From Haliotis cracherodii (lineage: Eukaryota): a DNA stretch of 64,000 nt. The stretch lies in the NCBI RefSeq assembly GCF_022045235.1, contig NW_027266274.1:17174001-17238000 (forward strand), written 5' to 3'. This document shows positions 26,991-55,168 of the stretch, in pieces. The notes under the pieces were generated by a model. The model saw only the letters and a program-made list of their open reading frames with translations. It made no database searches and had not been told where the DNA came from. Every line of letters begins with the position of its first letter. Position 1 is the stretch's first letter. The translations under genes were made by a program, and so were the position numbers.

Positions 26991-28005
26991 TCAGTTTACA
27001 TTGCACTATATGATATACCAGTTTATGTTGACATCTTTAGTGCATCCTGTTGACATCATTAGTGCATCCTGTTGATTGTTTAGTGAATGTTATGTAGCCA
27101 GCTACAAAAGTATCAGTTGTGTGCCTTCAGCAGTGCCGCTGTGGTACTCTCCCTACATTAGACACCCAACCAGTGCATGTCGTCATCCCCAGGAGTCACG
27201 CAGACCACTGGTTGATAGCATGAGCAATGTCCACTTCGTTGGCACGACGACACACAATCTGTTGTGTCACTCCTGTGCCCACGAGATCCTCATCCTGTCT
27301 TAACTGCGATGGACGTGCGTGTGTGTCGAGGAAGGGGGTGGGGATGGGGCTGGGGGTGGGGGTGGGGGTCGTGGGTTAAGGGTTAAGGGGGTACGTCTGA
27401 CAGTGATATCTGCTCAAAGACAGTAAAGGTGACAAGACAGTGAAGGGGTCCAAGTTTTCCAGGCATAAAAAAATCTTCTTCTGAATGCAACTTGTCCAAA
27501 TTTCTCCAGTAAGTAGGCAGGCTTACATTTACATATTTATGCCGATCAGTTATATCTGCTTTCACGTGATTGGTCGAATTTCAGTGTCATTTCTGCAGTT
27601 ATTGATGGATTCACATTAACACATCGGTGATGTATGTATATTTTTGTGTGAAGTAATTGGCTGAATTTCCAATGGTATCAACTCCATCGAATGTTGCCTG
27701 AGATGAAGTTGTTGTCGTTATTGTGACCTTGTTCAAACCCTTCCGGGTATTTTCTATTTCTGGTTTTGGTATTAAACGTTTCCACATGATAGTATTGTTT
27801 CACTTCCACAGCCGTAACACAACAAGAGTGAATGAGTATAGTTTTAAGCCACTTTTAGCACTATTCCAGCAATGTCACGGCGGGATGAGAAGGATGTCGT
27901 TCACGTTATTTGATCAGGGCGCACGTGACGTGTCAGGCATGGAGCAGGCCATGTTCGTCATTATATAAACAGTAAACACGTTTGAAATGTTTAACAACAA
28001 CAATG

Positions 28006-29572
28006 GTGTCCCCAAAAATGTTAAATGCATTAGAATCCATTTATTCCTGTGTTTAAAGCTGTGTTAAGATCAGAAATTGTTTTACAGAATGTTTTGATTG
28101 CCCTCTAGGCTGCGTAATGAGTCCATTTTTATTTTCTATTTTTATAAACGACTTAGCTTTGTATATAGAATCAACATGCACTCCAGGTGTGCAGCTACAC
28201 CCTGACACTGTACAGATGTTCCTATTGTTGTTTGCTGATGATGTTGCATTTATTGCTGATACTGTGTATGGCCTTCAAAAACGCATAAAAGCTCTGGAAA
28301 GTTTTTGTAGTAACCATCATCTAACAGTCAACTTGGATAAAACTAAGGTAGTGGTATTTAAAAATTGGGGTATTTTATCAAAATATGAAAAGTGGTATTA
28401 CGAGGGTCAAAAACTTCAGTGTGTAAGTTCTATTAAATATCTCGGTACCATTCTTTCAAAAACTCTCTCCTGGTCTTTGCATGTTAATAGTGCTGCTTTA
28501 CAAGCTAAAAAGGTCCTATTTGGTGTCATTAAATCTCTAAAATTGCTTCAACCTCTTCCTTATGCCTTGTTTTTCAAAACATTTTATTCTAAAATATCTC
28601 CAATTCTTTTATACGGTGCCGAGATTTGGGGCGTAGATACTTACAAAGAATTAGAGCAAACCCAGGTACTAGCATGTAAACGCTTTCTTGGGCTTAAACA
28701 ATCTTCATCAAATCATGTGGTTAGGGGGGGAATGCGAAAGGTATCCTATGTACATATGTGCTTATAAGCGTGTAGTTACTTATTGGTACAGAATTTTACA
28801 TTTGCCTGAAAATAGATTAGTTAAGAAATAATATAGATTATTAGTACTTAATGTTAAACATGGTAAGATCAACTGGGTCTCTAAAATCAAACACATTCTC
28901 TACTCGTTTGTTTTTGGCTACATATGGGAGATGCAATTTAGTAATAATAGTAGAAGTTTTATTTCGGAATTTGTAAACCGTTTAAAAGCCTCATCTGAGC
29001 AAGATTGGCATACAGCTGTTTCATCTAGCACTAAATCCCAAAGTTACTCTCTTTACAAAATTTCATTTGGCTTAGAAAGCTATATCAATGTAGTAAATGT
29101 TTCAAAATTCAGAGCTGCACTTGCTCAGTTGAGATGCTCCTCCCATCGGCTGCGAATTGAGACCGGTCGATATATTAAGGAAATCAGAGAACAGAGACTG
29201 TTTGATTTGTAACCAGAATTTTATAGAGGACGAATATCATTTTGTGCTTATATGCCACGCTTATAGTGATTTAAGAGCTGAACATATTCCTCCTAAATAT
29301 TTTACAACCCCATCTAAAAATAAATTTAATGCTCTTGTCATCCACTAACTTTAAAATCATACGAAATCTAGCAACCTACGTTTACAAAGCTTTTCGACTT
29401 CGTTCATTGCATACAGTCTAAATATTTATTTGTATATATGCATGTGTATGTGTATGAATGTGTATGGATATACATGTAAAATAGTGGTAATTCTTTTTTC
29501 TCCCTCTCTCTGTAAATAGGTCTGTGTAATAGGCCTACGGCCTAACACTTTTTGTGAACAAACAATATATAT
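28006..29572 (+). mobile_element. 5'-truncated, degenerate non-LTR retrotransposon (RTE-X-like) RT and C-terminal zinc finger
   Basis: SPFLFSIFINDL...LLFADD...VNLDKTKVVVF...YLG; LRCSSHRLRIETGRY; CN..IEDEYHFVLIC. 3' hairpin TAGGCCTACGGCCTA; TSD AACAACAATG (27996-28005, 29573-29582). Confidence 0.88.
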
Positions 29573-29801
29573 AACAACAATGAAATGTACTTCAAGTCCA
29601 AGCCAAATTTTGCTGATGCTGATGCTCAGGAAGATGTGAAACAGAGATTAGAACACAAAGACACTCTGAAACTAAGTACTCCTTGTCCATCGCTAGAAAC
29701 TTGGCTTCGAAAAAATCAAGCAAAACAGTAAATATATTGAACACAGTATGTCTCTAAATTTAAGTGATAATTCTTCACAGATATTGAGAATACATTCCGC
29801 A

Positions 29802-30113
29802 TCACCCCACCGGAATGAGGTTTCCTGCGCTCACGGCCCGGAGCGAGTCCACATAGATCCACTCCATGGCGCGGTACGGAGCCAACAGCTTGCAGTAGTA
29901 CACGCCCCCGTAGGAGCCGCGAGTCGTCACGAGGGAGGGGGAGGTTACCTCCAGCGCATTCACAGTTTCCTTCGACTGCAAGTTCCTTGCAACCCATTGG
30001 GCGCCCGTACCGGTTTTAACGTCGTTTTCGAAAACCATTCTCCTCACTGCACGTTTCTGGTAGCGAGTCCTAGCCACGCTGGAGGAAGAGCTGAGAGCCA
30101 GTTGGAAAGCAGC
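29802..30113 (-). CDS. Duplicated terminal exon (7b) of alpha/beta-hydrolase B: candidate alternative last exon or remnant of a third paralog
   Basis: Intact CACACAG acceptor, phase 0, 103 codons AAFQLAL...YYCKLLAPYRAMEWIYVDSLRAVSAGNLIPVG*. No upstream exons of its own were found between 30.1 and 36.4 kb. Confidence 0.7.
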   Translation of the reverse strand, partial: AAFQLALSSSSSVARTRYQKRAVRRMVFENDVKTGTGAQWVARNLQSKETVNALEVTSPSLVTTRGSYGGVYYCKLLAPYRAMEWIYVDSLRAVSAGNLIPVG

Positions 30114-30130
30114 CTGTGTGTAGAGGGTCA

Positions 30131-30945
30131 ACACACCATGTACAACAATCTCCACCCAGCGTCATGTCATGTGCAACTATTGCCATACAGGGACACACCA
30201 TGTACAACAATCTCCACACAGAGACACACCGTGTACAACAATCTCCATACAGAGACACACCTTGTACAACAATCTCCACACAGAGACACACCGTGTACAA
30301 CAATCTCCATACAGAGACACACCATGTACAACAATCTCCATACAGAGACACACCATGTACAACAATCTCCACACAGAGACACACCATGTACAACATTCTC
30401 CATACAGAGACACACCATGAACAACAATCTCCATACAGAGACATACCATGTACAACAATCTCCATACAGAGACACACCATGAACAACAATCTCCACACAG
30501 AGACATACCTTGTACCACAATCTCCATACAGAGACACACCATGAACAACAATCTCCATACTGAGACACACCATGTACAACAATCTCCATACAGAGACACA
30601 CCATATACAACAATCTCCATACAGAAACACACCATGTACAACAATCTCCATACAGAGACACACCATGTACAACAATCTCCATACAGAGACACACCATGAA
30701 CAACAATCTCCACACAGAAACACACCATGTACAACAATCTCCACACAGAGACACACCATGTACAACAATCTCCATACAGAGACACACCTTGTACATCAAT
30801 CTCCATACAGAGACACACCTTGTACAACAATCTCCACACAGAGACACACCATGTACAACAATCTCCATACAGAGACACACCATTAACAACAATCTCCACA
30901 CAGAGACACACCTTGTACAACAATCTCCATACAGAGACACGCCAT
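30131..30945. repeat. 31-bp minisatellite
   Basis: Unit CACACCATGTACAACAATCTCCATACAGAGA, about 26 copies; same family as 36831-37395. Confidence 0.95.
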
Positions 30946-33900
30946 GATGCTCAGTACAGCAAAACATTATACATGAAAGTTATGAGAAATGTTTACAAAA
31001 ATACGAATCATATTTGCAGTCAGAACTAATCACATTCAACCAACTCGAGATGCAGCAGCAATAATGTTGCCTTTCCATTTATACGGTGTCTAAATCAATT
31101 TCTTGCAAAGTACATTAAACTTTGGTTTTTGTTGTTTATTTTATGAAGAATAGTCAGTGGATAATGATCAGTGTACATTTGTATAGGAAACATCTGTCGT
31201 ACCCTAGTACACTTTAAATTTTGTAAAGCTTACAACAGAGCAAGGGTCTCATTTTGAATGGTGAAATAATGTCTCTGATGTTTGTCAAATTTTCGTAAAT
31301 AATAACAAACAGGATAATCAAAGTATTATGCTTCTTCCTGCTATACGATGCCTGCTCCAGCACCAATGTCACTGGCATCTACAGCTACTTTGAAAGATAT
31401 TTTAAAGTTGGGTGCCCGGAGACCAGAACAATTCACGAGAATGGCTTTAATTTTCTTAAAAGCAGACTGAAAATTGCTGTCCCAAACAAATTTCACCTTT
31501 GTGCCAAGCAAATCAGTGAGAGGGGCCACCACGTGTGAGAGATTTGGACAAAATCGACAGTAGTAACCAGCCATATCCAGACATCTCAAAAGTTCCTTTT
31601 TGTTTTGTAGATCTGGGAATTTTGAAATAACTTTCATCTTTGCTTGTACGGGCTGCACCTGACATTGTGCGTGTGCAAATTGTAACAGTCAACTTGGCTT
31701 CAGTGAGTGTCTCCTCGAAGAAGGCAAGGATCCTCTTCAGGTGTTCGTTCCACTCCATGGAATGATAGATGACATCGTCAACATTGACTTTGACACCTTC
31801 AAGATTGGCCGTGATGTCAGTGTCCAGCATGTACTGAATCTCCTTCTTCAGAGCTTTAAGCTAGATTGGATTCATCCGATAGGGATGTTGTTTTACAGGC
31901 ACAGAGTCTCCTACATCTACATCATGAAATATGTTTACACACTAAATCTGTACGGCCAGGTACATCCGTGAACAAGTGAACAAACTCTTCAATTAACTCT
32001 GACACTTGGGTGTTTTGCTCAGATGACAAATGACTTAACTTATCATCCAAGTTAGCTAACACTTCAGAATTTTAAGTTAGGGCTCGCATAATCAGCAATG
32101 CCATCACACTTGACAAACTCTTAATTATCATCAGCATCACAGCCTGATGCAATATGCATAGGAGAAACAGTGGCAACACACTAAGTGGGTACATTGCCAT
32201 GTCTTTCATGATACTTTCTAATCATATTGACATGACAAAGCTGTGTCTTTTTACGACGGCCTGGTGTTTGTACAGCATAGTCAATATCACTGATTTCTCT
32301 GTCAAAACCATACGGACCGTTGTACCTAGCATGTAATTATTGACCAGGGATTGGAAAAAACACTCCGACTTTATCGCTAGGACTGACATTTCTCGCGTGA
32401 GACTTTTTGTCATAATGTATTTTCATTTTGTCCTTGGATACCTTAAAGTTTTCACTAGCAACTTCACAAGTTTTTGAGAGCCTAGCCTGAAATGATGAGA
32501 CATGCTCCAACAAACCCATTTCAGACTTATCATTCAGCCAATACCCCTTCAAGTGCCTTAACGGTCCACGGTACAGCCAAAGACAAGGTCAAAAGACCTA
32601 GGGGCTCCTGAACTGACTCCATCATAGCAACAACACTAAATGAATGCCTTCATCCAATTCCTTCTCAGTCTCAAAACAGTAGGTCCGTATCATATTCTTA
32701 AGAGTCTGATGAAATCTCTCTAAAACCCCTTGAGATTCTGAGTGGACTTAATCTGAGTGGTGAAGAACTATACAAAAGCCTTGATAATAACTTGAGCTGT
32801 AGTTTTCCATAAAGGAATAGCCTCTGGAATCCTCGTGGAAGTACACATGATAGTGAGCATGTACTGCTTTCCTGACTTAGTTTTAGGCAAAAGGACCAAC
32901 ACAATCAATGATGACTTTACTGAAAGGTTCCCCCAAAGCTGGACTGGGTTCAAAGGGGTGGCTGGGATTTTCTGATAAGGTTTGTCAACCATTTGACACA
33001 CGTGGCACGTTTTGCAAAATTCAGACACATCATGCCGCAAATGAGGCCATAAGAAATGGGACACAGTTTACCCAATATACCGCCTGTAATATCACTAACT
33101 GCCCCCTACCCAGAACTGGTTCCTCAAGCGCCAAACTGTCAGAATTTTTATTACTTTCCTTTGAAAAGAGAATGAACCATAAAAGTGCCAGCCAACTCAG
33201 AACTGGAATCATTCTCAGAAGAGCTTTGTTTAGCCATAGCATGAGTAACATCACCCGAAGAGAAAATACCTGGAATTTCTTTTTCAAGATTTTCAGTACC
33301 TTCCGAAGTGCTTGGCTGAAGACAAATAACAGGGTCCCCCAACCACCTCCCCCCTACCAAATAATACCCAATGAGCTTGTCTACACCCTTAACAGGTAGG
33401 GGCTCTACAACACCCACCTTGACCAACCCAGACACCAAAATCTGTCTTAAAATTCACCGAATGGAGAGGTTAACAGGTATAGCCACATAAACCCTCTCAC
33501 AAAACCTCAGGGTCATCTGATGACTCCTCAGAAAGTGGTAAATAACCATCCAAAATTAGAGTTTGAAGAGCACCAGTATCCCTCAAAGCGGTAACGGGCT
33601 TAACAGTAGAACTGTCAGCTTAGCTGACACAAACTTTTACTCATATAAGGTAAGTACTCCTCTCACAACAGACTCCTCTCACCGACAGACTTTGATTACT
33701 CATCTACATCAGCTAATTCCTCATTAGCCGAACCCCAAAAGGTTGTGACTTGACATCCACAAAAGCATTCGGGGAAGAATGGCTGTTTTTGAAAGCTCCA
33801 AAATGATATACCCTGGCTTACGGTAATATCTACAAGTAAGCTCTGACGAAAATCTAGGGACCAACTGGAGTAGATGTTTTGTCAACAAACTCAGAACCAG

Positions 33901-35369
33901 ACTTGTTAGAACTAGATCAATTAGCGGGTGGACTAGCCTTTCCTGATGTGTAATATGTCTGTAACTCCTGCCTGTAAACCCTGACTCCTTAAAACTAACC
34001 CTGTTAATAATCGTCAGCCAGAGCAGCAGCCTTGCGTAACTGATCCACTTTCTGCTCATCAAGTTGTCTGAATGTCCATTGACACACACTACTTAAAATC
34101 CTGTCAGCAAGACCTTTGAAGTACAGCACCTATCAAACAGAGTTTCCACCTCCCTTGCAAACCCAACAAAAGTAGTAAAACCATCGCTTCTTAGCAGACC
34201 TAAACTTTTGCCTGTAAGCTTCAGGAACCAATTCATAAGCCTTCAAAACTTCAGCCTAAGAAACAACCTGATAATCAGAATGCCTATCAATGGGTAAAGT
34301 ACAATACACGTCTTGAGCATTTACCCTGAACACACTTTGCAACAACATGGTCCATTGATCCTGCGGCCATTCGAAACTGTATACTACCTTTTCAAAATGT
34401 AGGAAAACTTTCTCCACATCACATTCAGAGAATTGCGGAACAAGTCTAATCTGCTTGGAAAGATCAACCGATCCATCACATCACCTGTTGAGGTACGGGG
34501 GAGAGATATCATTCTGTAATTCAATTTGCTTCAGTTTAATTTCTTTATAGGTTTCAATTTCTATTTGCTTACTCAGAAATTCACTCTCTTCTTTTTCTTT
34601 CTCAGCTTCCAATTTCAAATTTTCTTTTTCATTCTTAACATCAATTTCTTTAAGCCAAAATTCTTTCTTATTCTCAACTTCGATTCTTGACCTTTCTTTA
34701 CATTTTTTAAGCCAAATTTCAATAGACATTTTTTCTCTTCCAAATTATAATTTCTTCAAAGCCAAAACATAAGTCTTTTATTAAAGCAAGGTCAATCATC
34801 TTCATTCAAATGTTTTCCCCAATCAGGTAAGTTATCAAGATGTTCTTGCCATTAGCCTTAAGCATACCCGATTTGATATCAAGTTTGTAATGTCTGGCCA
34901 ATTCGACCAGTTCAGACTTTTTGAGCATACAGACTTGTTTCGTTGAAGGTTGGCTAACGGATTCCAATTCACAAAAAACACAGTGATTGTTGGCTTCGCA
35001 CAGTATTAGACATTAAAATCTTTCTCCAAATTTGTGTACAAATACTTTGTGATATATTTAATTTCTATCCCGGACGAGCCCCAAATTTCTGTTACATGTC
35101 GATTCCCAAATTGATACACAATTTACAAATGTATTACACAATTCACTAGGTTTACAAAAAAATACAATTACAATGGCAGTACACAATAGAGAGGTAATAC
35201 AATATTCATTGGCAAATATATAATATGATAGCCGTGTTCAGTATCAACTACAAAAATAACAAAAGTAATAATAGTATATTCACCCAGCGGCGACAGTTGT
35301 CAAACTTCAGAGATGAGCCTTGGCAGGGAATCAGGATGGGGGATCTACTCACGAACGCTGGTCTTGATG

Positions 35370-35802
35370 TTTGTTTGTTTGTTTGTTGTTTAACGCCGCA
35401 CTCAGCAATATTCCAGCTATATGATGGCGGTCTGTAAATAATCGAGTCTGAGCCAGACAAGGCAGTGATTAATATCATTAGCATCGATCAACGTGTAGCG
35501 GCCATAAAATGTCCGAGTCCCGTTATGGGATTCGAACCACGGACCTTCAGATCCGAGGTCGGATGCCTTGTCCACATGACCAAAGAGGTTAACCCCGTCA
35601 GCAAGCTGACAAGGTAAGGATGCCATCTGTGGGATGACTCCACGCCCTGCTACACACGCAGTTGGGATCGATGACATGCATCAACCAAGTCAGCGAGTCT
35701 GACCACCCGATCCCGTTAGTCTCCTCTTACGACAAGCATAGTCCCCTTTCACAGCAAGCATGGGTTGCTGAAGACCTAGTCTACCCCGGATCGTCACGGG
35801 TC
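35370..35802 (-). mobile_element. SINE family 1 inserted in the Gypsy LTR region
   Basis: Same head and tail as 3675-3940; interrupted by 35494-35654. Confidence 0.85.
35494..35654 (-). mobile_element. 161-bp solo-LTR-like element containing a tRNA-like (Arg-TCG-like) Pol III module
   Basis: TGTAGC...GCTACA termini and 4-bp TSD AACG/CACG. Internal TGGTCATGTGG (A box), CCTCGGA loop and GGTTCGAATCC (B box) on the - strand. Confidence 0.65.
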
Positions 35803-36486
35803 TGGATGTAATGAAATGTGTGAGAGACAAAATGTGTGAGAGATACGAGAGGCACAGTCTTGTCCCCCTGATATACAGTCTAACTGGCTACTGGACATTT
35901 CTACACAGTGCCATCACCTGTGTAGCGGCTCTAGAACATCACAGATTATTCCATCCATGTCCACTGTACACCGGAAGTTTACACGCGACTCTAGCATCTA
36001 AATATAGACACTTCCTCAAAACTGCTTTCATTAAACAGTACCACATTCCTGACAACTAATCACTGTCCAAACACAATGCAACGAGCATCTACCGAATCTC
36101 AACGGAAACAATGGAACACAGCTACAACCACCGTTCAACAACAAAATACACTGCATATAAAGCGTATATACTGCTGTCTTCCTCAGGCTAGCTGACTCCA
36201 CTGTTAAGATGTTATTGATCCTAGATGACGCCACGAGAGGTACGTAGTTAACCCAAGCTGGACACACGAAAAGGATGGCGTAAATCCAACTTGATCAGGG
36301 CGCACGTGAAGTGAGGGGCACCAACATGGATCTATTCAATAAATGAACAGTCAACACGTAATTCTTGTTCATGGCTAGAAACTTTTCTTTGAAAAAAATC
36401 GAGCAAAACAGTACAACACATTTAATTCAGCATATGACTAAATTTAAATGAAACAATCTTCACAGATATTGTGAACACATTCTCCA

Positions 36487-39400
36487 TCATCCCACTAGAC
36501 TGGGGGATTTTCCTGCGCTCACGGCCCGGAGCGAGTCCACATAGATCCACTCCATGGCGCGGTACGGAGCCAGCAGCTTGCAGTAGTACATGCCTCCAAA
36601 AGACGAGATGAAGGTGTTGAGACTCGTCACAAGGGAGGCAGAAGTTACTTCCAGCTCAGTCGCAGTTTCCTTTAAGTCCAACTTCCATCCTACCCATTGG
36701 ATGCCAGTGCCAATTTTAACGTCGTCTTTGAAAACCATTCTCCTCACTGCACGTTTCTGGTAGCGAGTCCTAGCCACGCTGGAGGACGAGTTGAGAGCCA
36801 GTTGGAAAGCAGCCTGTGTGTAGAGGGTCAACACACCATGTACAACAATCTCCATACAGCGTCACGCCATGTACAACAATCTCCATACAGAGACACACCA
36901 TGTACAACAATCTCCATACAGCGTCACGACATGTAAAACAATCTCCATACAGAGACACACCATGTACAACAATCTCCAGACAGAGACACACCATGTACAA
37001 CAATCTCCATACAGAGACACACCTTGTACATCAATCTCCATACAGAGACACACCATGTACAACAATCTCCATACAGAGACACACCTTGTACATCAATCTC
37101 CATACAGAGACACACCATGTACAACAATCTCCATACAGAGACACACCATATACAACAATCTCCATACAGAGACACACCTTGTACAACAATCTCCATACAG
37201 CGTCACGCCATGTACAACAATCTCCATACAGAGACACACCATGTACAACAATCTCCACACAGAGACACACCATGTACAACAATCTCCATACAGAGACACA
37301 CCATGTACAACAATCTCCAGACAGAGACACACCATGTACAACAATCTCCAGACAGAGATACACCATGTACAACAATCTCCATACAGAGACACGCACATTG
37401 TTGAGACACGCACAATGAGCATGAAGAAGATGGGTTTGGGTCCTGATTTTCACAGACAGCTGTTACTACAAGTCAACTGGGCGGCCCACGTTATCACATT
37501 CAAACAGGAACACGTATATCTCTCACCTCGTTGATATCTTTGCACGTGATGGAAGGGGCGGACCCGGCCTTGACCCCCGACAAAGATTTCACGACAGCTT
37601 CACGTGTCTTCATCTTGGCCTCGAGTTGGTCTGGGGATGCTTTGTTTGTGGAGACATCCATGGGGTTGAAGGGCAAGCCCACGTGGGTGACGGTAACGAC
37701 GTTGTTGGTGCCCGTCTGTGCCTTGGCCAGCACAAACTGAGCCTCGCCGTCCTCCTTGTTCGTGATCTGATATACACAGATATACTACAGTTGACCTGTG
37801 TGTGATATACACAGATATACTACAGTTGACCTGTGTGTAATATACACAGATATACTACAGTTGACATGTGTGTGGAATACACCGATTTACTACACCTGAC
37901 CTGTGTGATATACACAGATATAGTACAGTTGATCTGTGTGTGATATACACAGATATACTACAGTTGACATATGTGTGATATACACAGTTATACTACAGCA
38001 TACTACAGTTGTCCTCTGTGTGATATACACAGATATACAACAGCATACCGCAATGACCTGTGTGATACAGACATATATGGGCGAGTGAACATTTATCACA
38101 CGATGTACATGTTTAATACCCATAGTTTTAGAAAAATAACCGATTTAATAAAAATTGCATTAGCATTTGTGCAAAGAATGACTTCACGCGCACCAGTTTC
38201 TTCCTTACGTAATCCGAACGGCATAGTTGACGTCATTCGAGCCTTATTGTGAAATGATGTCTGAATGACCTCAAAATGGAGTTCAAAAGGATTAAGAAAT
38301 AATGGCTAATAATGACATTATAACACTCGCATGTGTGTCCAACTGATTCTACGAAACTCAAGCAAGAATTCATGCATTACACTTGCTCGCGTTCAGGAAA
38401 TTAAAGACATCTGACATTCGTTTCATCAGTATGTGCAAAGATTGTGCATTTATTGGAACCTCTTCTACTTCATAGAAGTACATCATGATATACATGGATA
38501 TACATCAGTAAACCTCTCCCATATTACATACATGGATATACATCAGTAAACCTCTTCCATATGATATGCATGGATATACATCAGTAAACCTCTCCCATAT
38601 GATATGTATGGATATACATCAGTAAACCTCTCCCATATGATATGTATGGATAAACATCAGTAAACCTCTCCCATATGACATGCATGGATATACATCAGTA
38701 AACCTCTCCCATATGACATGCATGGATATACATCAGTAAACCTCTCCCATATGATATGCATGGATATACATCAGTAAACCTCTCCCATATGATATCCATG
38801 GATATACATCAGTAAACCTCTCCCATATGACATGCATGGATATACATCAGTAAACCTCTCCCATATGATATACATGGATATACATCAGTAAATCTCTCCC
38901 ATATGATATGCATGGATATACATCAGTAAACCTCTCCCATATGATATGTATGGATATACATCAGTAAACCTCTCCCATATGATATGCATGGATATACATC
39001 AGTAAACCTCTCCCATATGATATGTATGGATATACATCAGTAAATCTCTCCCATATGATATGCAGCGATATACATCAGTAAACCTCTCCCATATGATATG
39101 CATGGATATACATCGGTAAACTCTCCCATATGACATGCATGGATATACATCGGTAAACTCTTCCATATGATATACATGGATATACATCAGCAAAACGTCT
39201 TCAGTGTGATACACGTGGATATACACCAGTAAAACCACTCTAGTTGAACTGTATGGAGCTTACTAATTGTAGCAATCTCGTTAAAGTAGACAGAGACAAC
39301 CAGTTGATATGCTTTCTGACTGCTCGCCTACCTTCAGCGTCTTGGCGATGTCGCCTAGCAACAGTTGCTGGGCGCGGATGGTCCAGCCGGACACCTTCTG

Positions 39401-42400
39401 GTCATTCACGTCGAGGGTCTTGAGGTCCAGCAATGGCTGTGGCCGGGAGGAGAGTGGGGTTAGTCTTGTTTGTTTGTTTGTTTGTTTGTTTGTTTGTTAT
39501 GAATAGAGTCTGGACCAGAGCATCCACTGATTGACATCATAAGCATTGATCTACGCAAATGAGATACGATGACATGCATCAATCAAGTCAGCGAGCCTGA
39601 CCACCCGCCTCTTACGTCAAGGGGTTGCTGAAGACCAATTCGTACGGGGATCTTTACGGGTCATCCTGTACATTAGTGCTGAATACAGTATCATCATGTA
39701 CAATAGTGTCGAACACAGTGTCGTCATGTTTAGCAGTGTCGAACACAGTGTCGTTATGTACTGAGTATCAAACACAGTGTCGTCATGTACATTAGCGCCG
39801 AACACAGTGTCGTCAGGTACAGTAGTGTCGTCATGTACAGTAGTGTCATACCCAGTGTCGTCATGTAAAGTAGTGTCGAACACACTGTCGCCATGTAAAG
39901 TAGTGTCGAACACACTGTCGCCATGTAAAGTTGTGTCGAACACACTGTCGTCATGTACAGTAGTGTCGAACACACTTTCGCCATGTAAAGTAGTGTCGTA
40001 CACACTGTCGCCATGTAAAGTAGTGTCGAACACACTGTCGTTATGTACAGTAGTGTCGAACACACTGTCGTCATGTAAAGTAGTGTCGAACACACTGTCG
40101 CCATGTAAAGTAGTGTCGAACATACTGTCGTCATCTTAAGTAGTGTCGAACACACTGTCGTCATGTACAGTAGTGTCGAACACACTGTCTCCATGTACAG
40201 TAGTGTCGAACACAGTGTCGCCATTTACAGCAGTGTTGTACACAGTGTCGTCATGTACAGTAGTGTCGAACACAGTGTCGTCATGTACAGTAGTGTCGAA
40301 CACACTGTCGTCGTGTACAGTAGTGTCGAAGACCGTGTTGCCATGTACAGTAGTGTCGAACACAGTTTCGTCATGTACCCTTTTCGGTGTGCAACCTTGC
40401 TGCATGTAAATACAATAAATACCTTGACCACTGCGGTGTGCAACAAGACTGAACCATTAAAATGTTTACTTTCATGATGCGACTTGTAGCCGCATACGCC
40501 TGCTTGAGGGCGACCTTGGCCTTCGAGACGTCGGTCTGCGGCTGTTGAAGCGTTGCTACCAGGAAGTTATTGCAGTGCTGCGCAATCACTTTGTGCGCAC
40601 TTGATTCAGTGACCTCTGCGGCAAGGTCCTCCTTGACGACCCCTGAGGGCATGGTGCCTGACGCGAACTGGGCGTGGTTGATGCCAGACATGATGACGAC
40701 AGGGGTGCGGTACATAGCGTTGGCGTCCTTAGCAACGTCACTCTGCAACTCCCTGGAATCAGTTTTACGTGCACGTCGTGCATACAGTACCCGGATGGTG
40801 ATTGGGGCTAAACAAACTCACACAGGGTGACGTGACGGGGGTTTAAGCAAACATACACAGGGTGACGTGACGAGGGGCTAAACAAACATACACAGGGTGA
40901 CGTGACGAGGGGCTAAACAAACATACACAGGGTGACGTGACGGGGGTTTAAGCAAACATACACAGGGTGACGTGACGAGGGGCTAAACAAACATACACAG
41001 GGTGACGTGACGGGGGTTTAAGCAAACATACACGGGTGGACGTAACGAGGAGTTAAACAAACATATACAGGTTGACGTGACGGGATTTTAAACATAGGAT
41101 CTCGTCATCTCTAAACAAAGCAAATTCTCACATTTGGGCTACTGACGTATACGTCTGATGCAATGATTTGTAAACGTTCTAGATTGGGGAGCAATTAATG
41201 GTACGAAAAGTACATATGTAAAAAGGATAAAGAGCAGGGCGGGATTTTGGTCGCATTTTCATTCCGTTAATATTTTTTGTAATATCATTCAACAAGTTTG
41301 TAGTACTCGTCGTTAAAAGATCTTCAGTGTAGACGGTGCTGACGTAGTGCATGGAACTCACTGGAAGGTGTCTGCGATCCTGGTGATGCGTGTGTTGCCG
41401 TCCAGGTCGCCGGAGATAGTGAGGACAGGAAGAGGGTACTGGGACAGGGGATTCCCCTTGGTGATGTAGGATGCCAACAGCAGGATGCCCTTTAACTGTT
41501 TGGCATGAGATTTCCCATGGTTCCCAACGAAGACGCCTGTTAAGAGAGAGAGATACTGTTATTTGAAAGTGATTTTACATTCAGTAGAACAGTTGTAAAT
41601 ATGAATGCAGAAAGTGCCCGTGGCAGCAAATGATTGACTTGCTCGTAAAATAGACGTTGAGTGATGTCGTGGCCAAATTTGAACAACAGTTACTGTAAAC
41701 TTTCAATAATGGTTTTAATCGTTCGGGAGGTTTCTGTAGTGTACAGTTTCTAGAAGACTGGCTGAACCATTAAAGCAGCGACAAGAGAGAGATTCGAGAT
41801 CTTTTTCGACCTCACTTATTTCTAATCTACTTGCTAAGTGTGGTTTGTATTACTGTTTGGAAGCATCGCATTCCTACCAGCTTCCAAAGCCATTCTTGAT
41901 TCAAGAATGAAGGCTTCTTTCAAGACATTCCGACAATATTCTGCACATCTGTGTTACTAACTATAATTCACAGGTCCTTTACCCACTGCTGCAGCCACGT
42001 ATTTGTCGAGATGTCTTGACTTGTTTATTGTAAACCTGAAACCATGTGTTTAAACTATTATTTACTGATTATTTATTGATCTTGTGTTGTCGGGGGCACA
42101 GGTAGCCCAGTCGTCTAAGGCGACGCGATTTGCTGTGCAGAGTTGCGTCCATTGGGCACGCCAGAAACCTGTGATTGTGGGTTCGAATCCCGGTTCGCCC
42201 CGATTATGTTTCTAGGTTTGTCAGAACCATACCCGTGCTCGTGGGTTTCACCGAAGTGGTAAACGTCTGAGACCTGCATCACCTCGGGCTTTCCTCCCAC
42301 ATTAAGCTGACACGCCGTGATATAACTGGAATACTGCTAAAAGCGGCGTTAAATCCAACTCACTCACTCAATCTTGTGTTGTCAATTTTACTGATTGCCT

Positions 42401-44101
42401 AATTCAGTTTTCTGCAAATCAATTCCTTAGTTGGCATCTGTGTTTCAGTATTAATACAACATCACTCAAGATTATCAAATAAAATTGGTTTAATGTTTAC
42501 CCTGTAATTTGGTTGTTCCCATTGGTCAGATGTTGATTTGAAATGACTAGTTTGAACCAAGGGGTACACTGTGACGATGTTAATTTTTTTCTAGAAAATC
42601 AAATACCTCCGAGACTGTGTCCTGCCAGGAAGACGTTGTCAGAAGTCATTCCTTTCTTCCGGAGCTGCGCAATGGCGTCCGTGACAGCCCCCGACAGCTG
42701 TAGGGGGTTTGGGAGATCGGCGATAAACTCCGCCAGAACAACTACCCAGAGTTTCAGAGGAGACGACTTCTGTATTTCCTGCCCTGTGTTGGACAAAGAA
42801 AATTAAAACACGTTGTTGATCTTAGCATTAGTATTAGCTAGCGATGACCAAGGCAGCCTCGGGGCCTAACATATATCTACATCTGTATATCTGACTTCGG
42901 TATTATATATAACATATATCTACATCTGTATATAAGACCTCGGTATTATATATAACATATATCTACATCTGTATATCTGACCTCGGTATTATATATAACA
43001 TATATCTACATATGTATATCAGACCTCGGTATTATATATAACATATATCTACATCTGTTTATCAGACCTCGGTATTATATATAACATATATCTACATCTG
43101 TATATCTGACCTCGGTATTATATATAACATATATCTACATCTGTATATCTGACCTCGGTATTATATATAACATATATCTACATCTGTTTATCAGACCTCG
43201 GTATTATATATAACATATATCTACATCTGTATATCTGACCTCGGTATTATATATAACATATATCTACATCTGTATATCTGACCTCGGTATTATATATAAC
43301 ATATATCTACATCTGTATATCTGACCTCGGTATTATATATAACATATATCTACATCTGTATATCTGACCTCGGTATTATATATAACATATATCTACATCT
43401 GTATATCTGACCTCGGTATTATATATAACATATATCTACATCTGTATATCTGACCTCGGTATTATATATAACATATATCTACATCTGTTTATCAGACCTC
43501 GGTATTATATATAACATATATCTACATCTGTATATCTGACCTCGGTATTATATATAACATATATCTACATCTGTATATCTGACCTCGGTATTATATATAA
43601 CATATATCTACATCTGTATATGAGACCTCGGTATTATATATAACATATATCTACATCTGTATATCAGACCTCGGTATTATATATAACATATATCTACATC
43701 TGTATATCAGACCTCGGTATTATATAAAACATATATCTACATCTGTATATCTGACCTCGGTATTATATATAACATATATCTACATCTGTATATCTGACCT
43801 CGGTATTATATATAACATATGTCTAAATCTGTATATCTGACCTCGGTATTATATATAACATATATCTACATCCTTTTTACATCTGCTCTCGGCACCTCGA
43901 GGGACCTTGCATGAGAGACTAGTCTTATGACCCAGCTAGCGACCTACCTAGTGGAATATACTGTTCTCCCTTCACGTAGGCCCCGGGCACGATGACCAAG
44001 GCAGCCTCGGGGCCTTGTTTGGCCTGGGGGGTCAGGATGTGAGGGGTGACGGCTAGGGTCACGCCCAGGACGGAGGTCAGCAGCAACACAGTGGCCGTCA
44101 T
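36487..44101 (-). CDS. Secreted alpha/beta-hydrolase (Abhydrolase_5-like) paralog B, 7 exons, 486 aa
   Basis: Exons 44101-43948, 42783-42607, 41536-41362, 40752-40470, 39436-39332, 37766-37527, 36813-36487. All GT-AG and in phase (1461 nt). Signal peptide MTATVLLLTSVLGVTLA; triad GHSLGG / SGDLDG / INHAQF. Confidence 0.93.
36831..37395. repeat. 31-bp minisatellite
   Basis: Same unit as 30131-30945, about 18 copies. Confidence 0.95.
37768..38072. repeat. About 35-bp minisatellite abutting an exon-6 acceptor
   Basis: Unit TGATATACACAGATATACTACAGTTGACCTGTGTG. Confidence 0.88.
38485..39235. repeat. 38-bp minisatellite
   Basis: Unit CATGGATATACATCAGTAAACCTCTCCCATATGATATG, about 20 copies. Confidence 0.95.
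39466..39662 (-). mobile_element. SINE family 1 (internally deleted)
   Basis: (TTTG)n tail, GTCTGGACCAGA body and GACCCGTAAAGATCCC head on the - strand. Confidence 0.8.
39665..40378. repeat. 30-bp minisatellite
   Basis: Unit TAGTGTCGAACACACTGTCGTCATGTACAG. Confidence 0.94.
40805..41095. repeat. 35-bp minisatellite
   Basis: Unit AAACAAACATACACAGGGTGACGTGACGAGGGGCT. Confidence 0.9.
42092..42370 (+). mobile_element. tRNA-derived SINE family 3 (Leu/Ser-like head, TTTCCTCCCAC body)
   Basis: TAGCCCAGTCGTCTAAGGCG...GGTTCGAATCCC, shared GGAATACTGCTAAAAGCGGCGTTAAA tail, 13-bp TSD ATCTTGTGTTGTC. Confidence 0.9.
42867..43872. repeat. 43-bp AT-rich minisatellite
   Basis: Unit TAACATATATCTACATCTGTATATCTGACCTCGGTATTATATA, about 23 copies. 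Confidence 0.96.
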
Positions 44102-49483: not shown

Positions 49484-52400
49484 TCATAGGGTGTGGTTCC
49501 TGAGCGAGTCGACGTATATCCACTCCATGGCGCGATATGGCGACAACAGTTTGCAATAGAACATCCCGGCCAAGGACGAAATCACGAAATCCACGGGCGT
49601 TATCAAGGAAGCGGAAGTCACCTCGAGCGCATGCTCCGTTTCTGTAAACTGAAGTTTCCATGGTAACCACTCTAGTCCGGTCTTGAGATTGGTGTCGTTC
49701 TTGAAAACCAGCGGCCGTACAGCTCGAGTGCGATACCGATACTGTGCCCGGAGGGAGGAGGAAGTAACAGCCAGTTTCGTCGCGGCCTGTGGGCAGAGAG
49801 AACATTTCATTATTTTATTATTACGAAGTCGTAAAGACCTGGGTGCCGTTGTACAAAGCAACCTTAGCGCTACGACAGTCGTAAGTCTATGTAAGGGTAT
49901 TGGAGTTACAATCACCTTAGCGCTAAGACCACTTTGTACAACGGCACCCGGGCAGTCTCCTACCCAGAGTTCCATGCGGCCAGCATCGTACCTCTGCCAT
50001 AGGCCAGCGCCATGTAACAATTCGTCACATCTTACACAGTCAATTCAAAATATTGCACATGTTTTTTCAGCTGTTTCATTTTTGACAAGTCTGTATATTT
50101 AGATGAACATATGTCATAGAATGGTTAACTATCACTGAGCAAATATCCTAAATCGTGAAAAACTATTTCCATTTGCGTAGTTATCCTATGTTTACATTGG
50201 TTGTACGGCTCCGCGTGCTGTTTTCGAAGCGATACGGCCACTTTGATGTATAAATATATATACGTTGAATGCACCTCAATATCGCAGTTGTAGTAGCATA
50301 TCTATATGATTATGCAACATAATATATACAGCGCCTCAACATACTTGCATTAGGCTTATTTGTTCTGATTTCAGAATAAGCGCGTTCGTTCGTTTACAAT
50401 CAAAAGAAAAGTCCGGTCACGTAATATGCAAATTTGACGGTGGCAGTGGTGTTATGCTAAGTCATCACTGTGTCGGACTCAGACGACCTGGCTTGTGCCA
50501 TTCATTAAGACGTGTTACGACATTGGGGTGTTACGACCTTGTTATCATGCTACTAAGGCGTTATGACTGGTTATCATTATACTAAGGCGTCAGTACAACT
50601 ATGGTTATCATGCTATTAAGACGTTACGACCTATTTATCATGCTACAAAGACGTTACGACTGATTATCATGCTATTACGACGTTACGGCCTATTTATCAT
50701 TCTACTAAGACATTACGACTGCTTATCATGTTATTAAGACGTTACGACCTAGTTATCATGCTACTATGGCGTTACGATTGGTTATCCTGCTACTAAGACG
50801 TTACGACTGGTTATCATGTTATTAAGACGTTACGACCTATTTATCATGCTACTAAGACGTTTCGACTGGTTATCATGCTACTAAGGCGTTACGGCTGTTA
50901 TCATGCTACTAAGACGTTACGACCTAGTTATCATGCTACTAAGGCGTTACGACTGGTTATCATGTTACTCATGGTTGAACCTGGATCTGACAGAGGTATC
51001 GTGGAGACGGTATCCACTTGGTCGGAAGATACCCGGTGATCCTGTTCAGCAGTACCTCGTTAATTTCCCTGCAACTTCCGGCTGAGTCTGTAACAGTGCT
51101 GGCACCAGGGGTCGCTGCTTGAACAATTGCGTCACGTGATTTCATCTTAACCTCGAGTTGTAGAGGAGAGTCAAGGTTCGTGGAGATGTCCAGGGGGTTG
51201 GAGGGAAGGTCAACGTGGGTGTAGGTGTCGACAACTACTTCATCTTGTCCCGTCTTGTTGATCTTTGGTTTCGAAGAACCGAAGTCCACCGAGTCATACA
51301 CGGTGTTGACCACCTACATGAAACATAAAGTCGCTATCAATAGATAGAGACTATTTCATGAAACATAAAGTCGCTATCAATAGACAGAGACTATTTCATG
51401 AAACATAAAGTCGCTATCACTAGATAGAGACTATTTCATGATAATTAAGTAGCTTTTAATAGATACAGACTATTTCAAGGAAAATAAAGTAGCTTTTAAT
51501 TGATAGAGACTATTTCAAGAAAAATAAAGTAGATTTAATAGATAAAGACTATTTCATGAAACATTAGGTAGCTTTTAATAGAGAGAGACTATTTCAAGAA
51601 AAATAAAGTAGCTCTTGATAGATAGAGACTATCTTCATGAAACATTAAGTAGCTTTTAATAGACAGAGACTATTTCACGAAAATTTAAGTAGATTTAATA
51701 CATAGAGACTATTTCATGAAACATTAAGTAGCTTTTAATTAATGGAGACTATTTCAAGAAAAATAAAGTAGCTCTTGATAGATAGAGATTATCTTCATGA
51801 AACATTAAGTCGCTATCAATAGATAGAGACTATTTCATGAAACATTAAGTAGCTCTTGACAGATAGAGACTATTTCATGAAACACTAAGTCGCTATCAAT
51901 AGATAGAGACTGTGTCATGAAACATTAAGTCGCTATCAATAGTTAGGGACTATTTCATGAAACATTAAGTAGCTCTTGATAGATAGAGACTATTTCATGA
52001 AACATTAAGTAGCTCTTGACAGATAGAGACTATTTCATGAAACACTAAGTCGCTATCAATAGATAGAGACTGTGTCATGAAACATTAAGTCGCTATCAAT
52101 AGTTAGGGACTATTTCATGAAACATTAAGTAGCTCTTGATAGATAGAGACTACCTTCATGAAACATTAAGTAGCTCTTGACAGATAGAGACTATTTCATG
52201 AAACATTAAGTCGCTATCAATAGATAGAGACTGTGTCATGAAACATTAAGTCGCTATCAATAGTTAGGGACTATTTCATGAAACATTAAGTAGCCCTTGA
52301 TAGATAGAGACTACCTTCATGAAACATAGAGTATGAAACCGTCTGCCAGGCGTGTGACGCCATCAAGCCCGTTGATGGTGGTAGCAACCACATCGTGCGT

Positions 52401-55101: not shown

Positions 55102-55168
<67 letters not shown>

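What the first reader, a model, noticed from the sequence alone, without database searches (positions are those of the whole stretch)
29680..37527. Duplicated, intact terminal exon with a hypervariable core: candidate swappable C-terminal cassette for a secreted hydrolase
Hydrolase B exon 7 (36813-36487) has a second copy 6.7 kb downstream (30113-29802). The copy keeps the same acceptor, phase, adjacent 31-bp minisatellite and an open frame, but has no upstream exons of its own. Divergence is mosaic. About 125 nt spanning the acceptor differ at 2 positions and about 82 nt encoding YYCKLLAPYRAMEWIYVDSLRAVSAG differ at 1. The intervening 47 codons carry about 18 amino-acid changes plus an in-frame 4-codon indel (KDDVKIGTGIQWVGWKLDLKETATELEVTSASLVTSLNTFISSFGGM vs ENDVKTGTGAQWVARNLQSKETVNALEVTSPSLVTTRG----SYGGV), and the 3' UTRs are visibly diverged. 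Inference: an old duplication whose framework is homogenised by gene conversion while a variable segment diversifies. This would give one catalytic domain two alternative C-terminal specificity modules by alternative last-exon splicing across a Gypsy insertion.
Basis: partly seen in the sequence, partly recalled or inferred. Interest (0 to 1): 0.8.

Follow-up and report, generated by a model that had tools for sequence, protein, structure and literature searches.

The report
Duplicated last exon, alternatively spliced
An abalone gene for a secreted alpha/beta-hydrolase has two copies of its last coding exon, and both are spliced to the same upstream exons to give two proteins with different tails; public annotation already lists both isoforms and this kind of arrangement is known, so it is a neat but ordinary case.

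Summary
Exon 7a (36813-36487) and exon 7b (30113-29802), with about 130 nt of 3' UTR and a 31-bp minisatellite, form a 1.0-1.3 kb duplicate at 88% identity. Divergence is mosaic: identical runs of 64, 57 and 43 nt, P<0.001.

The main interpretation also holds. Exons 1-6 exist only once upstream. RNA-like contigs from two studies hold the 7b-specific core and UTR but not its intron, and the shared exon-7 start is joined to gene B exon 6.

RefSeq already lists both forms. Haliotis cracherodii XP_071104985.1 ends exactly with the 7a peptide and XP_071104986.1 with the 7b peptide, and they share residues 1-378. H. rufescens and H. rubra have matching isoform pairs.

Synonymous divergence is 0.05 in the two conserved blocks and 0.40 in the core, which indicates partial gene conversion.

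The "hypervariable" reading is not supported. Core dN/dS is 0.45, and all differences fall on positions that vary across the family. Every family-conserved residue is kept, and the 4-codon deletion lies in a predicted loop.

A role in specificity was not tested. This is a new member of a known kind (oyster AOX exon 10, Drosophila pipe). No other note of this scan on this window covers it.

The parts
37527..44101 (-). Gene B exons 1-6, shared by both isoforms. Approximate coding pieces: 44101-43946, 42784-42605, 41537-41361, 40751-40470, 39436-39332, 37766-37527. They encode a signal-peptide-like N-terminus, GHSLGG, SGDLDG and GINHAQF.
   Evidence: Exon translations match residues 1-378 of RefSeq XP_071104985.1 and XP_071104986.1 exactly, piece by piece. 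Exons 2-3 give weak PF12695 hits, and PF12695 is recorded for the full-length RefSeq protein.
37525..37527 (-). Exon 6 end and donor: ...AACGAG|GTGAGA, phase 0.
   Evidence: Sequence read directly. The loose end of the spliced contigs matches 37529-37558.
36831..37392 (.). 31-bp minisatellite in intron 6, directly upstream of the 7a acceptor (18 units).
   Evidence: TRF.
36487..36813 (-). Exon 7a, the proximal last coding exon (108 codons plus stop). It gives isoform X1 (486 aa).
   Evidence: Translation. It is identical to the C-terminus of XP_071104985.1.
36358..36486 (-). The part of the 7a 3' UTR that is homologous to the 7b UTR. It holds an ATTAAA signal at 36426-36421, 63 nt after the stop.
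   Evidence: Alignment and motif scan.
36162..36357 (.). Unique, non-duplicated flank downstream of 7a.
   Evidence: No other match in the assembly for query positions 352-548.
30962..36161 (.). Spacer of dispersed repeats and degenerate LTR-retroelement pol fragments (RNase H-like 31344-31688, integrase H2C2 32771-33067). It holds no hydrolase exons.
   Evidence: Pfam, copy number in the own genome, tblastn, repeats elsewhere in the window.
30131..30946 (.). 31-bp minisatellite with the same consensus, directly upstream of the 7b acceptor (26 units). It marks the upstream limit of the duplicate.
   Evidence: TRF and blastn.
29802..30113 (-). Exon 7b, the distal alternative last coding exon (103 codons plus stop). 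It gives isoform X2 (481 aa). The conserved blocks are 30113-30030 and about 29896-29815. The divergent core is about 30029-29897.
   Evidence: Translation. It is identical to the C-terminus of XP_071104986.1. RNA-like contigs lie on 29855-30056.
29676..29801 (-). The part of the 7b 3' UTR that is homologous to the 7a UTR. The ATTAAA of 7a reads GTTCAA here.
   Evidence: Alignment and motif scan.
28200..29675 (-). Likely extended 3' UTR of 7b transcripts. It runs antisense through a LINE-like reverse-transcriptase fragment (28057-28764, + strand). AATAAA/ATTAAA candidates lie at 29430, 29330, 28963, 28588 and 28254.
   Evidence: RNA-like contigs X1 rec1 and X2 rec19 continue from 29884 to about 29030 and about 28200. 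Pfam RVT_1. Motif scan.

Best explanation
The region is the 3' end of a gene for a secreted alpha/beta-hydrolase of the 'alpha/beta hydrolase fold-5' family (PF12695). This is gene B of a tandem pair, and the protein identity shows the window to be Haliotis cracherodii.

A segment was duplicated in tandem. It comprised part of the intron-6 minisatellite, the acceptor, the last coding exon and about 130 nt of 3' UTR. Transposable elements later filled the spacer, which is now 5.4 kb.

Both copies kept the same acceptor, phase, frame and stop. Transcripts either splice exon 6 (donor after 37527) to the proximal exon 7a and end at its ATTAAA, or read through and splice exon 6 to the distal exon 7b. 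The two proteins share residues 1-378 and differ in the last 108 or 103 residues.

Gene conversion has repeatedly copied two tracts between the exons: the acceptor region with codons 1-28, and the block YYCK...SAG. The 47-codon core, the tail and the UTR keep the old divergence. The core is under moderate purifying selection, not diversifying selection.

Shown here: the duplication, the mosaic, the single set of upstream exons, 7b sequence in spliced RNA-like data, and public isoform models that end in 7b. Inferred: the direction and timing of conversion, read-through of the 7a poly(A) site, the 7b poly(A) site, and any functional difference between the isoforms.
For: Duplicate and mosaic.

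One set of upstream exons.

RNA evidence. Runs X1 and X2 come from two studies and have no depth on intron bin 30124-30156.
- Each holds a 202-nt contig on the 7b-specific core 29855-30056.
- Each holds a contig from 29884 into the UTR and beyond.
- Each holds a contig of 1165 or 1235 nt that lies on 30030-30115 and then runs into letters matching the end of exon 6 at 37529-37558, 28 of 30.
- That long contig stops where 7a and 7b diverge, as expected if both continuations exist in the RNA.
- X10 holds two equal-length (64-nt) variants of the exon-7 start. One is 7b-type (0 mismatches, depth 77) and one is 7a-type (2 mismatches, depth 1572). Both have 6 letters beyond 30115 that did not align to the intron.

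Public models: XP_071104985.1 ends exactly with the 7a peptide and XP_071104986.1 with the 7b peptide, and residues 1-378 are identical. H. rufescens LOC124121713 X1/X2 form the same pair. H. rubra LOC124288171 X1/X2 share 379 residues and differ at 13 of the last 105. The substitutions seen in X1/X2 (T36N, V41F, Q46E, S67T) are those of H. rufescens isoform X2.

Gene conversion: pS is 0.05 in both blocks and 0.40 in the core, P=0.0003. The 44 intron bases before the acceptor are identical. The same blocks against gene A have pS about 0.6, so their synonymous sites are free to change.

7b is constrained:
- Its only coding indels are 12 and 3 nt, while the UTR has three 1-nt indels.
- Core dN/dS is 0.45, P=0.04.
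- All 22 differing core columns avoid the 9 family-conserved columns, P=0.0015, or 0.07 if only half of the changes are charged to 7b.
- S8 and R43 mark the 7b type in three species.
- The AlphaFold2 model of isoform X2 has pLDDT 89-98 over residues 381-470, and the deletion falls in the loop 442-448.
Against: - No single read or contig links exon 6 to the 7b-specific core. The first 86 nt of exon 7 are shared by both copies, so with 31-mer contigs the link is read from the topology of the contigs.
- The runs are only guessed to be RNA, and depth cannot be used quantitatively.
- X10, an RNA-like run of another organism label, shows no 7b core contig at 95% likeness or more.
- The XP_ models are automatic predictions, and I could not inspect the evidence behind them.
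- 7b has lost the ATTAAA that 7a uses.
- Between H. cracherodii and H. rufescens 7b changed at 6 of 103 residues and 7a at 2 of 108. This is compatible with relaxed constraint, though not significant (P=0.16).
- The H. rubra 7b-type exon is closer to the H. rubra 7a-type exon than to H. cracherodii 7b. The duplications could therefore be independent rather than one old event followed by conversion.
Confidence: 0.85

Rival explanations
1. 7b is a decaying relic of a partial duplication. It is spliced only as noise because it inherited a perfect acceptor, and isoform X2 has no selected function.
For: 7b has lost the 7a poly(A) signal. It changes about three times faster than 7a between two species, 6/103 against 2/108. 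It carries a 4-residue deletion and W43R. X10 shows no 7b core contig.
Against: The frame is open in the window, in RefSeq H. rufescens isoform X2, and over the laid 7b core in run X17, which shows no gaps or stops there. The coding indels are only multiples of 3. Core dN/dS is 0.45. No family-conserved residue is lost. S8 and R43 are shared by the 7b type across three species. The deletion lies in a predicted loop of a confident model. 7b core contigs have roughly a quarter to a third of the word depth of the shared upstream contig in X1 and X2, which is only a rough figure.
Confidence: 0.12
2. The core of exon 7 is a hypervariable cassette under diversifying selection, with conversion protecting the framework.
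For: 7a and 7b differ at 22 of 47 core columns while the flanks are nearly identical. 7b is the fastest-changing part of the protein between two species.
Against: Core dN/dS is 0.45, with pS 0.40 and pN 0.22. Core nucleotide identity (about 70-80%) is close to that of the non-coding UTR (about 78-80%), so the core shows baseline divergence, not excess. Differences between the window and the X1 allele of 7b are about 4 non-synonymous codons to 3 synonymous. The differing columns are the ones that vary throughout the family.
Confidence: 0.08
3. 7b is the last exon of a separate third hydrolase gene with its own upstream exons and promoter.
For: The locus is a tandem gene array (genes A and B), so a third copy would not be surprising.
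Against: No homologue of exons 1-6 lies between 30113 and 36487 or anywhere else in the window apart from genes A and B. The assembly has only four exon-7 homologues. The only upstream partner seen at the acceptor in RNA-like contigs is gene B exon 6. RefSeq places 7b in the same gene as 7a.
Confidence: 0.02
4. The second copy is an assembly artefact, such as a haplotype or collapsed repeat placed twice.
For: The copies are flanked by minisatellites and transposable elements, which are places where assemblies fail.
Against: The copies differ by 12%, with fixed indels and different flanks. An independent DNA-like run holds the 7b core and the 7b exon joined to its intron. Two other species have the same isoform pair.
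Confidence: 0.01

Closest known systems
Alternative oxidase (AOX) of the oysters Crassostrea virginica and C. gigas: tandemly duplicated terminal exon 10 (Liu & Guo 2017, PMC5589949)
   Same: It is a mollusc gene with a tandem duplication of the last coding exon plus part of the 3' UTR. Both copies carry a stop codon, and alternative splicing gives two proteins of nearly equal size that differ only at the C-terminus. One copy evolves faster between species, and the functional sites are kept in both.
   Different: In AOX the copies are adjacent and about 64% identical, and the choice is described as an alternative 3' splice site that includes one or both copies. Here the copies are 6.7 kb apart across transposon debris, and each is a separate terminal exon preceded by its own minisatellite. 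Parts of the exons are kept 98-100% identical by gene conversion.
Drosophila pipe, with tandemly repeated homologous terminal exons used mutually exclusively, and the PGRP-LC 3' variable regions (Acta Naturae 2022, PMC9013439)
   Same: Homologous duplicated 3'-terminal exons are chosen one per transcript, so one common N-terminal part gets alternative C-terminal parts.
   Different: Those cases have larger arrays (eight clusters in pipe). For PGRP-LC the choice is made by competing RNA structures. No such structure was sought or shown here, and this locus has only two copies.
Dscam arrays of duplicated alternative exons in Daphnia and Drosophila (PMC3236188)
   Same: Tandem exon duplicates are used alternatively to vary one part of a protein.
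   Different: They are internal mutually exclusive exons. GENECONV found no gene conversion between the Dscam paralogous exons, whereas here two tracts are clearly homogenised.
Small alpha/beta-hydrolases: AroC 9eh6, Pseudomonas carboxylesterase 1auo, chlorophyllase 8fjd, cutinases/PETases, acyl-protein thioesterases
   Same: The N-terminal domain of the family model (residues about 15-260 of the Patella homologue) superposes on these structures at Z 17-22, rmsd 2.5-3.4 Å over 184-221 residues. Foldseek gives E=2e-9 to 1e-6. The GHSLGG, DLDG and NH motifs are present.
   Different: Sequence identity is only 12-23%. The animal family adds a C-terminal half of about 230 residues, whose last 100 are encoded by exon 7. 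The structure searches did not cover that half, and no member of the family has a known substrate.

Membership tests
Alternative 3'-terminal exons born by tandem exon duplication | Two homologous last exons lie in tandem, in the same orientation, in one gene | tested here: met
   88% identity over 1035 nt, both on the - strand, 6.7 kb apart.
Alternative 3'-terminal exons born by tandem exon duplication | Only one set of upstream exons serves both copies | tested here: met
   tblastn finds exons 1-6 only in genes A and B. The genome has four exon-7 homologues.
Alternative 3'-terminal exons born by tandem exon duplication | Each copy has its own acceptor, open frame in the same phase, and stop codon | tested here: met
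   The acceptors are identical, the phase is 0, and the stops are homologous.
Alternative 3'-terminal exons born by tandem exon duplication | Each copy has its own cleavage and polyadenylation site | tested here: inconclusive
   7a has ATTAAA 63 nt after its stop. 7b lacks it, and its first AATAAA lies 374 nt downstream. Contigs run on for 0.85-1.7 kb, but contigs cannot show RNA ends.
Alternative 3'-terminal exons born by tandem exon duplication | Transcripts join the common upstream exon to either copy | tested here: met
   Spliced RNA-like contigs run from exon 6 into the shared exon-7 start and stop where the 7a and 7b sequences diverge, and a separate contig covers the 7b core. RefSeq isoforms X1 and X2 end in 7a and 7b. 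Caveat: no single molecule spanning exon 6 and the 7b core was seen.
Alpha/beta hydrolase fold-5 (Pfam PF12695, Abhydrolase_5) | Match to the Pfam model above its gathering score | tested here: met
   Single exons score below the threshold: exon 3 gives 21 bits, exon 2 gives 12 bits. Full-length homologues score 33-58 bits against a cut-off of 27. PF12695 is recorded for the H. cracherodii protein itself.
Alpha/beta hydrolase fold-5 (Pfam PF12695, Abhydrolase_5) | Ser-Asp-His catalytic residues in the nucleophile elbow GxSxG, after a strand (D), and in a loop (H) | tested here: met
   GHSLGG, SGDLDG and GINHAQF are present in gene B. H107, D156 and H195 are invariant or nearly so in the family alignment. 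That these residues are catalytic is inferred from the fold match.
Gene conversion (concerted evolution) between duplicates | Identical tracts are longer than the overall divergence predicts | tested here: met
   Runs of 64, 57 and 43 columns; permutation P=0.001, and P<1e-5 for the two longest together.
Gene conversion (concerted evolution) between duplicates | Homogenisation affects silent and non-coding sites, not only constrained residues | tested here: met
   pS is 0.05 in the blocks and 0.40 in the core. The blocks have pS about 0.6 against gene A. The 44 intron bases before the acceptor are identical.
Gene conversion (concerted evolution) between duplicates | Tree topology differs between converted and unconverted segments across species | not testable with these tools
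   Only protein sequences of other Haliotis species could be reached. At the protein level S8 and R43 follow exon type, while most other positions follow species.
Diversifying-selection cassette (hypervariable region) | Excess of non-synonymous over synonymous change in the variable part | tested here: not met
   Core dN/dS is 0.45. Between alleles or species of 7b there are about 4 non-synonymous codons to 3 synonymous.

The most novel reading that the evidence does not exclude
The two last exons are a selected pair. Partial gene conversion keeps the structural framework and the splice signals of both copies matched, while selection protects a few isoform-specific surface residues (S8, R43, the shortened loop 442-448) from being converted. 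The secreted hydrolase would then exist in two forms with different partner or substrate preference. The split would have been kept since before the divergence of the Californian abalones (H. cracherodii, H. rufescens) from H. rubra. This would be an example of conversion-limited divergence within a single gene's alternative exons, the opposite of the conversion-free Dscam arrays.
Probability: 0.3. Interest if true: 0.5.

Novelty: new member of a known kind. Interest (0 to 1): 0.3.

Why it matters
The finding shows that a raw-sequence reader can recognise an alternative last exon made by exon duplication, and the call is borne out by RNA-like data and public annotation.

Biologically it adds a second mollusc example to the oyster AOX case. 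One feature has not, to my knowledge, been described for such exon pairs: parts of the two alternative exons, and their acceptors, are kept identical by gene conversion while the middle stays diverged. That makes the locus a small natural test of how conversion and selection for isoform difference balance each other.

The protein family is widespread in marine invertebrates (406 relatives in the representative library) and has no known substrate. An isoform pair that differs only in the last 100 residues gives a handle on what the C-terminal half does. It does not open a long-standing question.

Tried and rejected
- Pfam on single exons gave nothing useful for exon 7; the weak KilA-N and MaoC hits are chance.
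- Sequence search of solved structures with exons 4 and 7 found nothing.
- The word search with the 7b peptide alone found only distant fragments, because of the length window.
- I looked for a third gene's exons and found none.
- I looked for homology beyond the duplicate on both sides. There is none upstream of the arrays. Downstream there is only a 46-nt similarity, 36268-36313 against 27887-27932. It could be the flank displaced by the LINE insertion or a shared repeat, and was left open.
- Polarising the core changes with gene A as outgroup failed because synonymous sites are saturated: 14 changes derived in 7b, 11 in 7a, 9 ambiguous.
- The structure searches covered only the N-terminal domain, so I make no claim about the fold of the C-terminal half or about whether the core faces the active site.
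- No paper mentions LOC124121713.
Exons were searched one by one, and full-length work used database proteins returned by the tools (P0001, P0159, P0171 and relatives).
- Read laying was given 961 letters.
- No tool reported any stretch as human-like.

Full report
**What is in the sequence**

On the - strand, 36813-36487 and 30113-29802 are two open copies of one coding exon. blastn aligns 29676-30692 with 36358-37392 at 87.9% over 1035 nt. Each copy is preceded by a 31-bp minisatellite with the same consensus, 18 and 26 units long. The last 44 intron bases and the acceptor are identical. Homology ends about 130 nt into the 3' UTR, at 36358/29676. No similarity exists upstream of the two arrays.

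- 2 differences in about 127 nt across the acceptor.
- 1 difference in the YYCK...SAG block.
- 18 substitutions plus a 12-nt in-frame deletion in the 47-codon core.
- UTR identity of about 78-80%.

A permutation test shows the mosaic is not chance. The longest identical runs are 64, 57 and 43 columns, P=0.001 for the longest, and no shuffle in 100,000 reached the sum of the two longest.

**The gene**

Stop-free stretches and tblastn show two tandem seven-exon paralogues on the - strand. Gene A spans about 58959-49499 and gene B spans 44101-36487. Exon 7 is present three times and exons 1-6 only twice. The whole 1.18-Gb assembly has four exon-7 homologues, the fourth on another contig, and only one 7b.

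Single exons give only weak Abhydrolase_5 hits. A full HMMER scan with the exon-7a peptide found 406 relatives. Most are proteins of about 480-510 residues in which this exon encodes the last 100 or so residues. The full-length relatives carry PF12695. Their sources call them 'alpha/beta hydrolase fold-5 domain-containing' or 'uncharacterized' proteins of molluscs, echinoderms and a hemichordate.

An AlphaFold2 model of the Patella homologue is confident (pLDDT 94.7). Its N-terminal 15-260 superposes on small carboxylesterases, chlorophyllase, cutinases/PETases and acyl-protein thioesterases at Z 17-22. The C-terminal half was not covered by those searches, so I say nothing about its fold.

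**Is 7b used? RNA-like data**

One run search and one laying were allowed. I laid four runs on 29200-30160, which is 961 letters. All four are Logan contigs, so strand, ends and levels cannot be read from them.

X1 and X2 come from two studies. I take them as RNA for three reasons: their contigs total only 44-78 Mb, they hold spliced contigs, and they have no depth on the intron bin 30124-30156.

Each of X1 and X2 holds three contigs:
- A 202-nt contig on the 7b-specific core, 29855-30056.
- A contig from 29884 through the UTR to about 29030 (X1) or about 28200 (X2).
- A contig of 1165 or 1235 nt that lies on 30030-30115 and then continues with 30 letters that match 37529-37558, the end of gene B exon 6, at 28 of 30.

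That long contig ends three letters beyond 30030, which is where 7a and 7b begin to differ. This is expected if both continuations are present. No contig carries the 7b intron boundary in these runs, whereas the DNA-like run X17 has one at 30030-30154.

X10 holds two 64-nt variants of the exon-7 start. One is 7b-type (depth 77) and one is 7a-type (depth 1572). In both, six letters beyond 30115 did not align to the intron.

The weak point is that the first 86 nt of exon 7 are shared by both copies. No single 31-mer contig can tie exon 6 to the 7b core, so the link is read from the arrangement of the contigs.

**Is 7b used? Public proteins**

I searched with the C-terminal part of the Patella protein, which reaches full-length relatives. 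This returned Haliotis proteins, and their clusters hold isoform pairs.
- XP_071104985.1 (H. cracherodii isoform X1, 486 aa) ends exactly with the window's 7a peptide.
- XP_071104986.1 (H. cracherodii isoform X2, 481 aa) ends exactly with the window's 7b peptide.
- The two share residues 1-378, and those residues match the window's exons 1-6 piece by piece.

The window is therefore H. cracherodii, and the annotation already contains the alternative last exon.

H. rufescens LOC124121713 has the same X1/X2 pair. Its 7b carries T36N, V41F, Q46E and S67T, which are the substitutions I had read from runs X1 and X2. H. rubra LOC124288171 X1/X2 share 379 residues and differ at 13 of the last 105.

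These XP_ entries are automatic models. They agree with the contigs but are not an experiment.

**Gene conversion, not hypervariability**

Nei-Gojobori counts are as follows:

| Segment | pS | pN | dN/dS |
|---|---|---|---|
| Block 1 (codons 1-28) | 0.05 | 0.016 | 0.33 |
| Block 2 (YYCK...SAG) | 0.05 | 0.000 | 0 |
| Core (47 codons) | 0.40 | 0.22 | 0.45 |

- The contrast in pS between blocks and core has P=0.0003.
- The same blocks compared with gene A have pS about 0.6, so their silent sites are free to change.
- The identity also covers intron sequence.

Together these points indicate conversion tracts rather than protein constraint.

The core is no more diverged than the UTR. Its dN/dS is below 1 (P=0.04). 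The name 'hypervariable' therefore does not fit: the core is simply the part that conversion has not reached.

**Is 7b constrained?**

Evidence for constraint:
- In an alignment of 55 family members of at least 440 residues, plus the four exon-7 peptides of this genome, every conserved column is kept in 7b. These columns include R17, Y18, F28, D31, G37, W40, L45, V56, S58, T63, G74 and the Y-C-K...R-A-x-E-W...D-S-L-R motif.
- All 22 differing core columns are family-variable ones, and the 4-residue deletion lies where the family varies in length.
- The chance of missing all nine conserved core columns is 0.0015. It is 0.07 if only half of the changes are charged to 7b.
- The coding indels are 12 and 3 nt, while the UTR has three 1-nt indels.
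- The model of isoform X2 keeps the same secondary structure, with pLDDT 89-98 over residues 381-470. The deletion falls in the loop 442-448.
- S8 and R43 mark the 7b type in all three species.

Evidence against:
- Between H. cracherodii and H. rufescens, 7b changed at 6 of 103 residues and 7a at 2 of 108. The difference is not significant, P=0.16.
- 7b lacks the ATTAAA that 7a uses.

**Origin and surroundings**

The spacer 30962-36161 is made of dispersed repeats with degenerate RNase H-like and integrase fragments. These are out of the canonical order, so the spacer is a patchwork rather than one Gypsy element. The stretch 36162-36357 is unique. Downstream of 7b lies a LINE-like reverse-transcriptase fragment on the + strand, and the RNA-like contigs cross it. 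The upstream breakpoint of the duplication is hidden in the minisatellite. How the duplication arose was not resolved.

**Comparison with known cases**

The oyster AOX gene has a tandem duplicate of terminal exon 10 plus part of the UTR, used alternatively, with one copy evolving faster (PMC5589949). Drosophila pipe and PGRP-LC use homologous terminal exons alternatively (PMC9013439). For the Dscam exon arrays no gene conversion was found (PMC3236188). Partial conversion is the one less usual trait here.

**Verdict**

The core of the interpretation, an alternative last exon with conversion of the framework, is supported. The 'hypervariable specificity cassette' part is not supported or was not tested. 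This is a new member of a known kind, already modelled in RefSeq, and of modest interest.

Noticed in passing
window 29594-29654: This 61-nt stretch in the 7b downstream flank is absent from runs X1, X2 and X17, where CGTCG stands in its place. It is 97% identical to an exon-like piece at G000:C9:19973019-19973081 and lies inside a 2515-nt RNA-like contig of X10. It looks like a small templated insertion copied from an expressed gene, and is polymorphic or specific to this assembly.
   Followed up: partly
window 37768-39998 and 30131-30946 / 36831-37392: The introns of gene B are packed with minisatellites of 31, 35, 38, 30 and about 48 bp units. The two 31-bp arrays before exons 7a and 7b share one consensus although they lie 6.7 kb apart.
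   Followed up: partly
window 28057-29593: A LINE-like reverse-transcriptase fragment (RVT_1, + strand) and a very high-copy repeat (DNA word depth in the thousands in X17) lie antisense within what seems to be the long 3' UTR of 7b transcripts.
   Followed up: partly
window 49499-58959 (gene A): The upstream tandem paralogue matches RefSeq XP_071104987.1. It has no 31-bp minisatellite and no second exon 7. Its exon-7 peptide is identical in H. cracherodii and H. rufescens (0 of 100 residues differ).
   Followed up: partly
Read-laying run X10 on window 29662-30024: This RNA-like run has very high depth (1500-4500) on the shared exon-7 start and a 7b-type variant of it at depth 77. Yet no contig lies on the 7b core at 95% likeness or more. 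The core contig may have been filtered as too divergent, or the 7b-type variant may be a 7a allele. This is unexplained.
   Followed up: no
window 36268-36313 and 27887-27932: A 46-nt similarity (score 42 against a shuffle maximum of 27) links the unique flank behind 7a and the DNA just beyond the LINE fragment behind 7b. It may be a remnant of a longer duplicated flank split by the LINE insertion, or a shared repeat motif.
   Followed up: partly
proteins P0174, P0175, P0177, P0178 (H. rubra LOC124288171 X1-X4): The four H. rubra isoforms combine two slightly different N-terminal parts (11-13 differences) with 7a-type or 7b-type last exons. This suggests two gene copies or haplotypes merged in one gene model.
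   Followed up: no
G000:C7:35547523-35547807 (L004): A fourth, distant homologue of exon 7 (36% identity) lies on another contig. It marks a further family member outside this locus.
   Followed up: no
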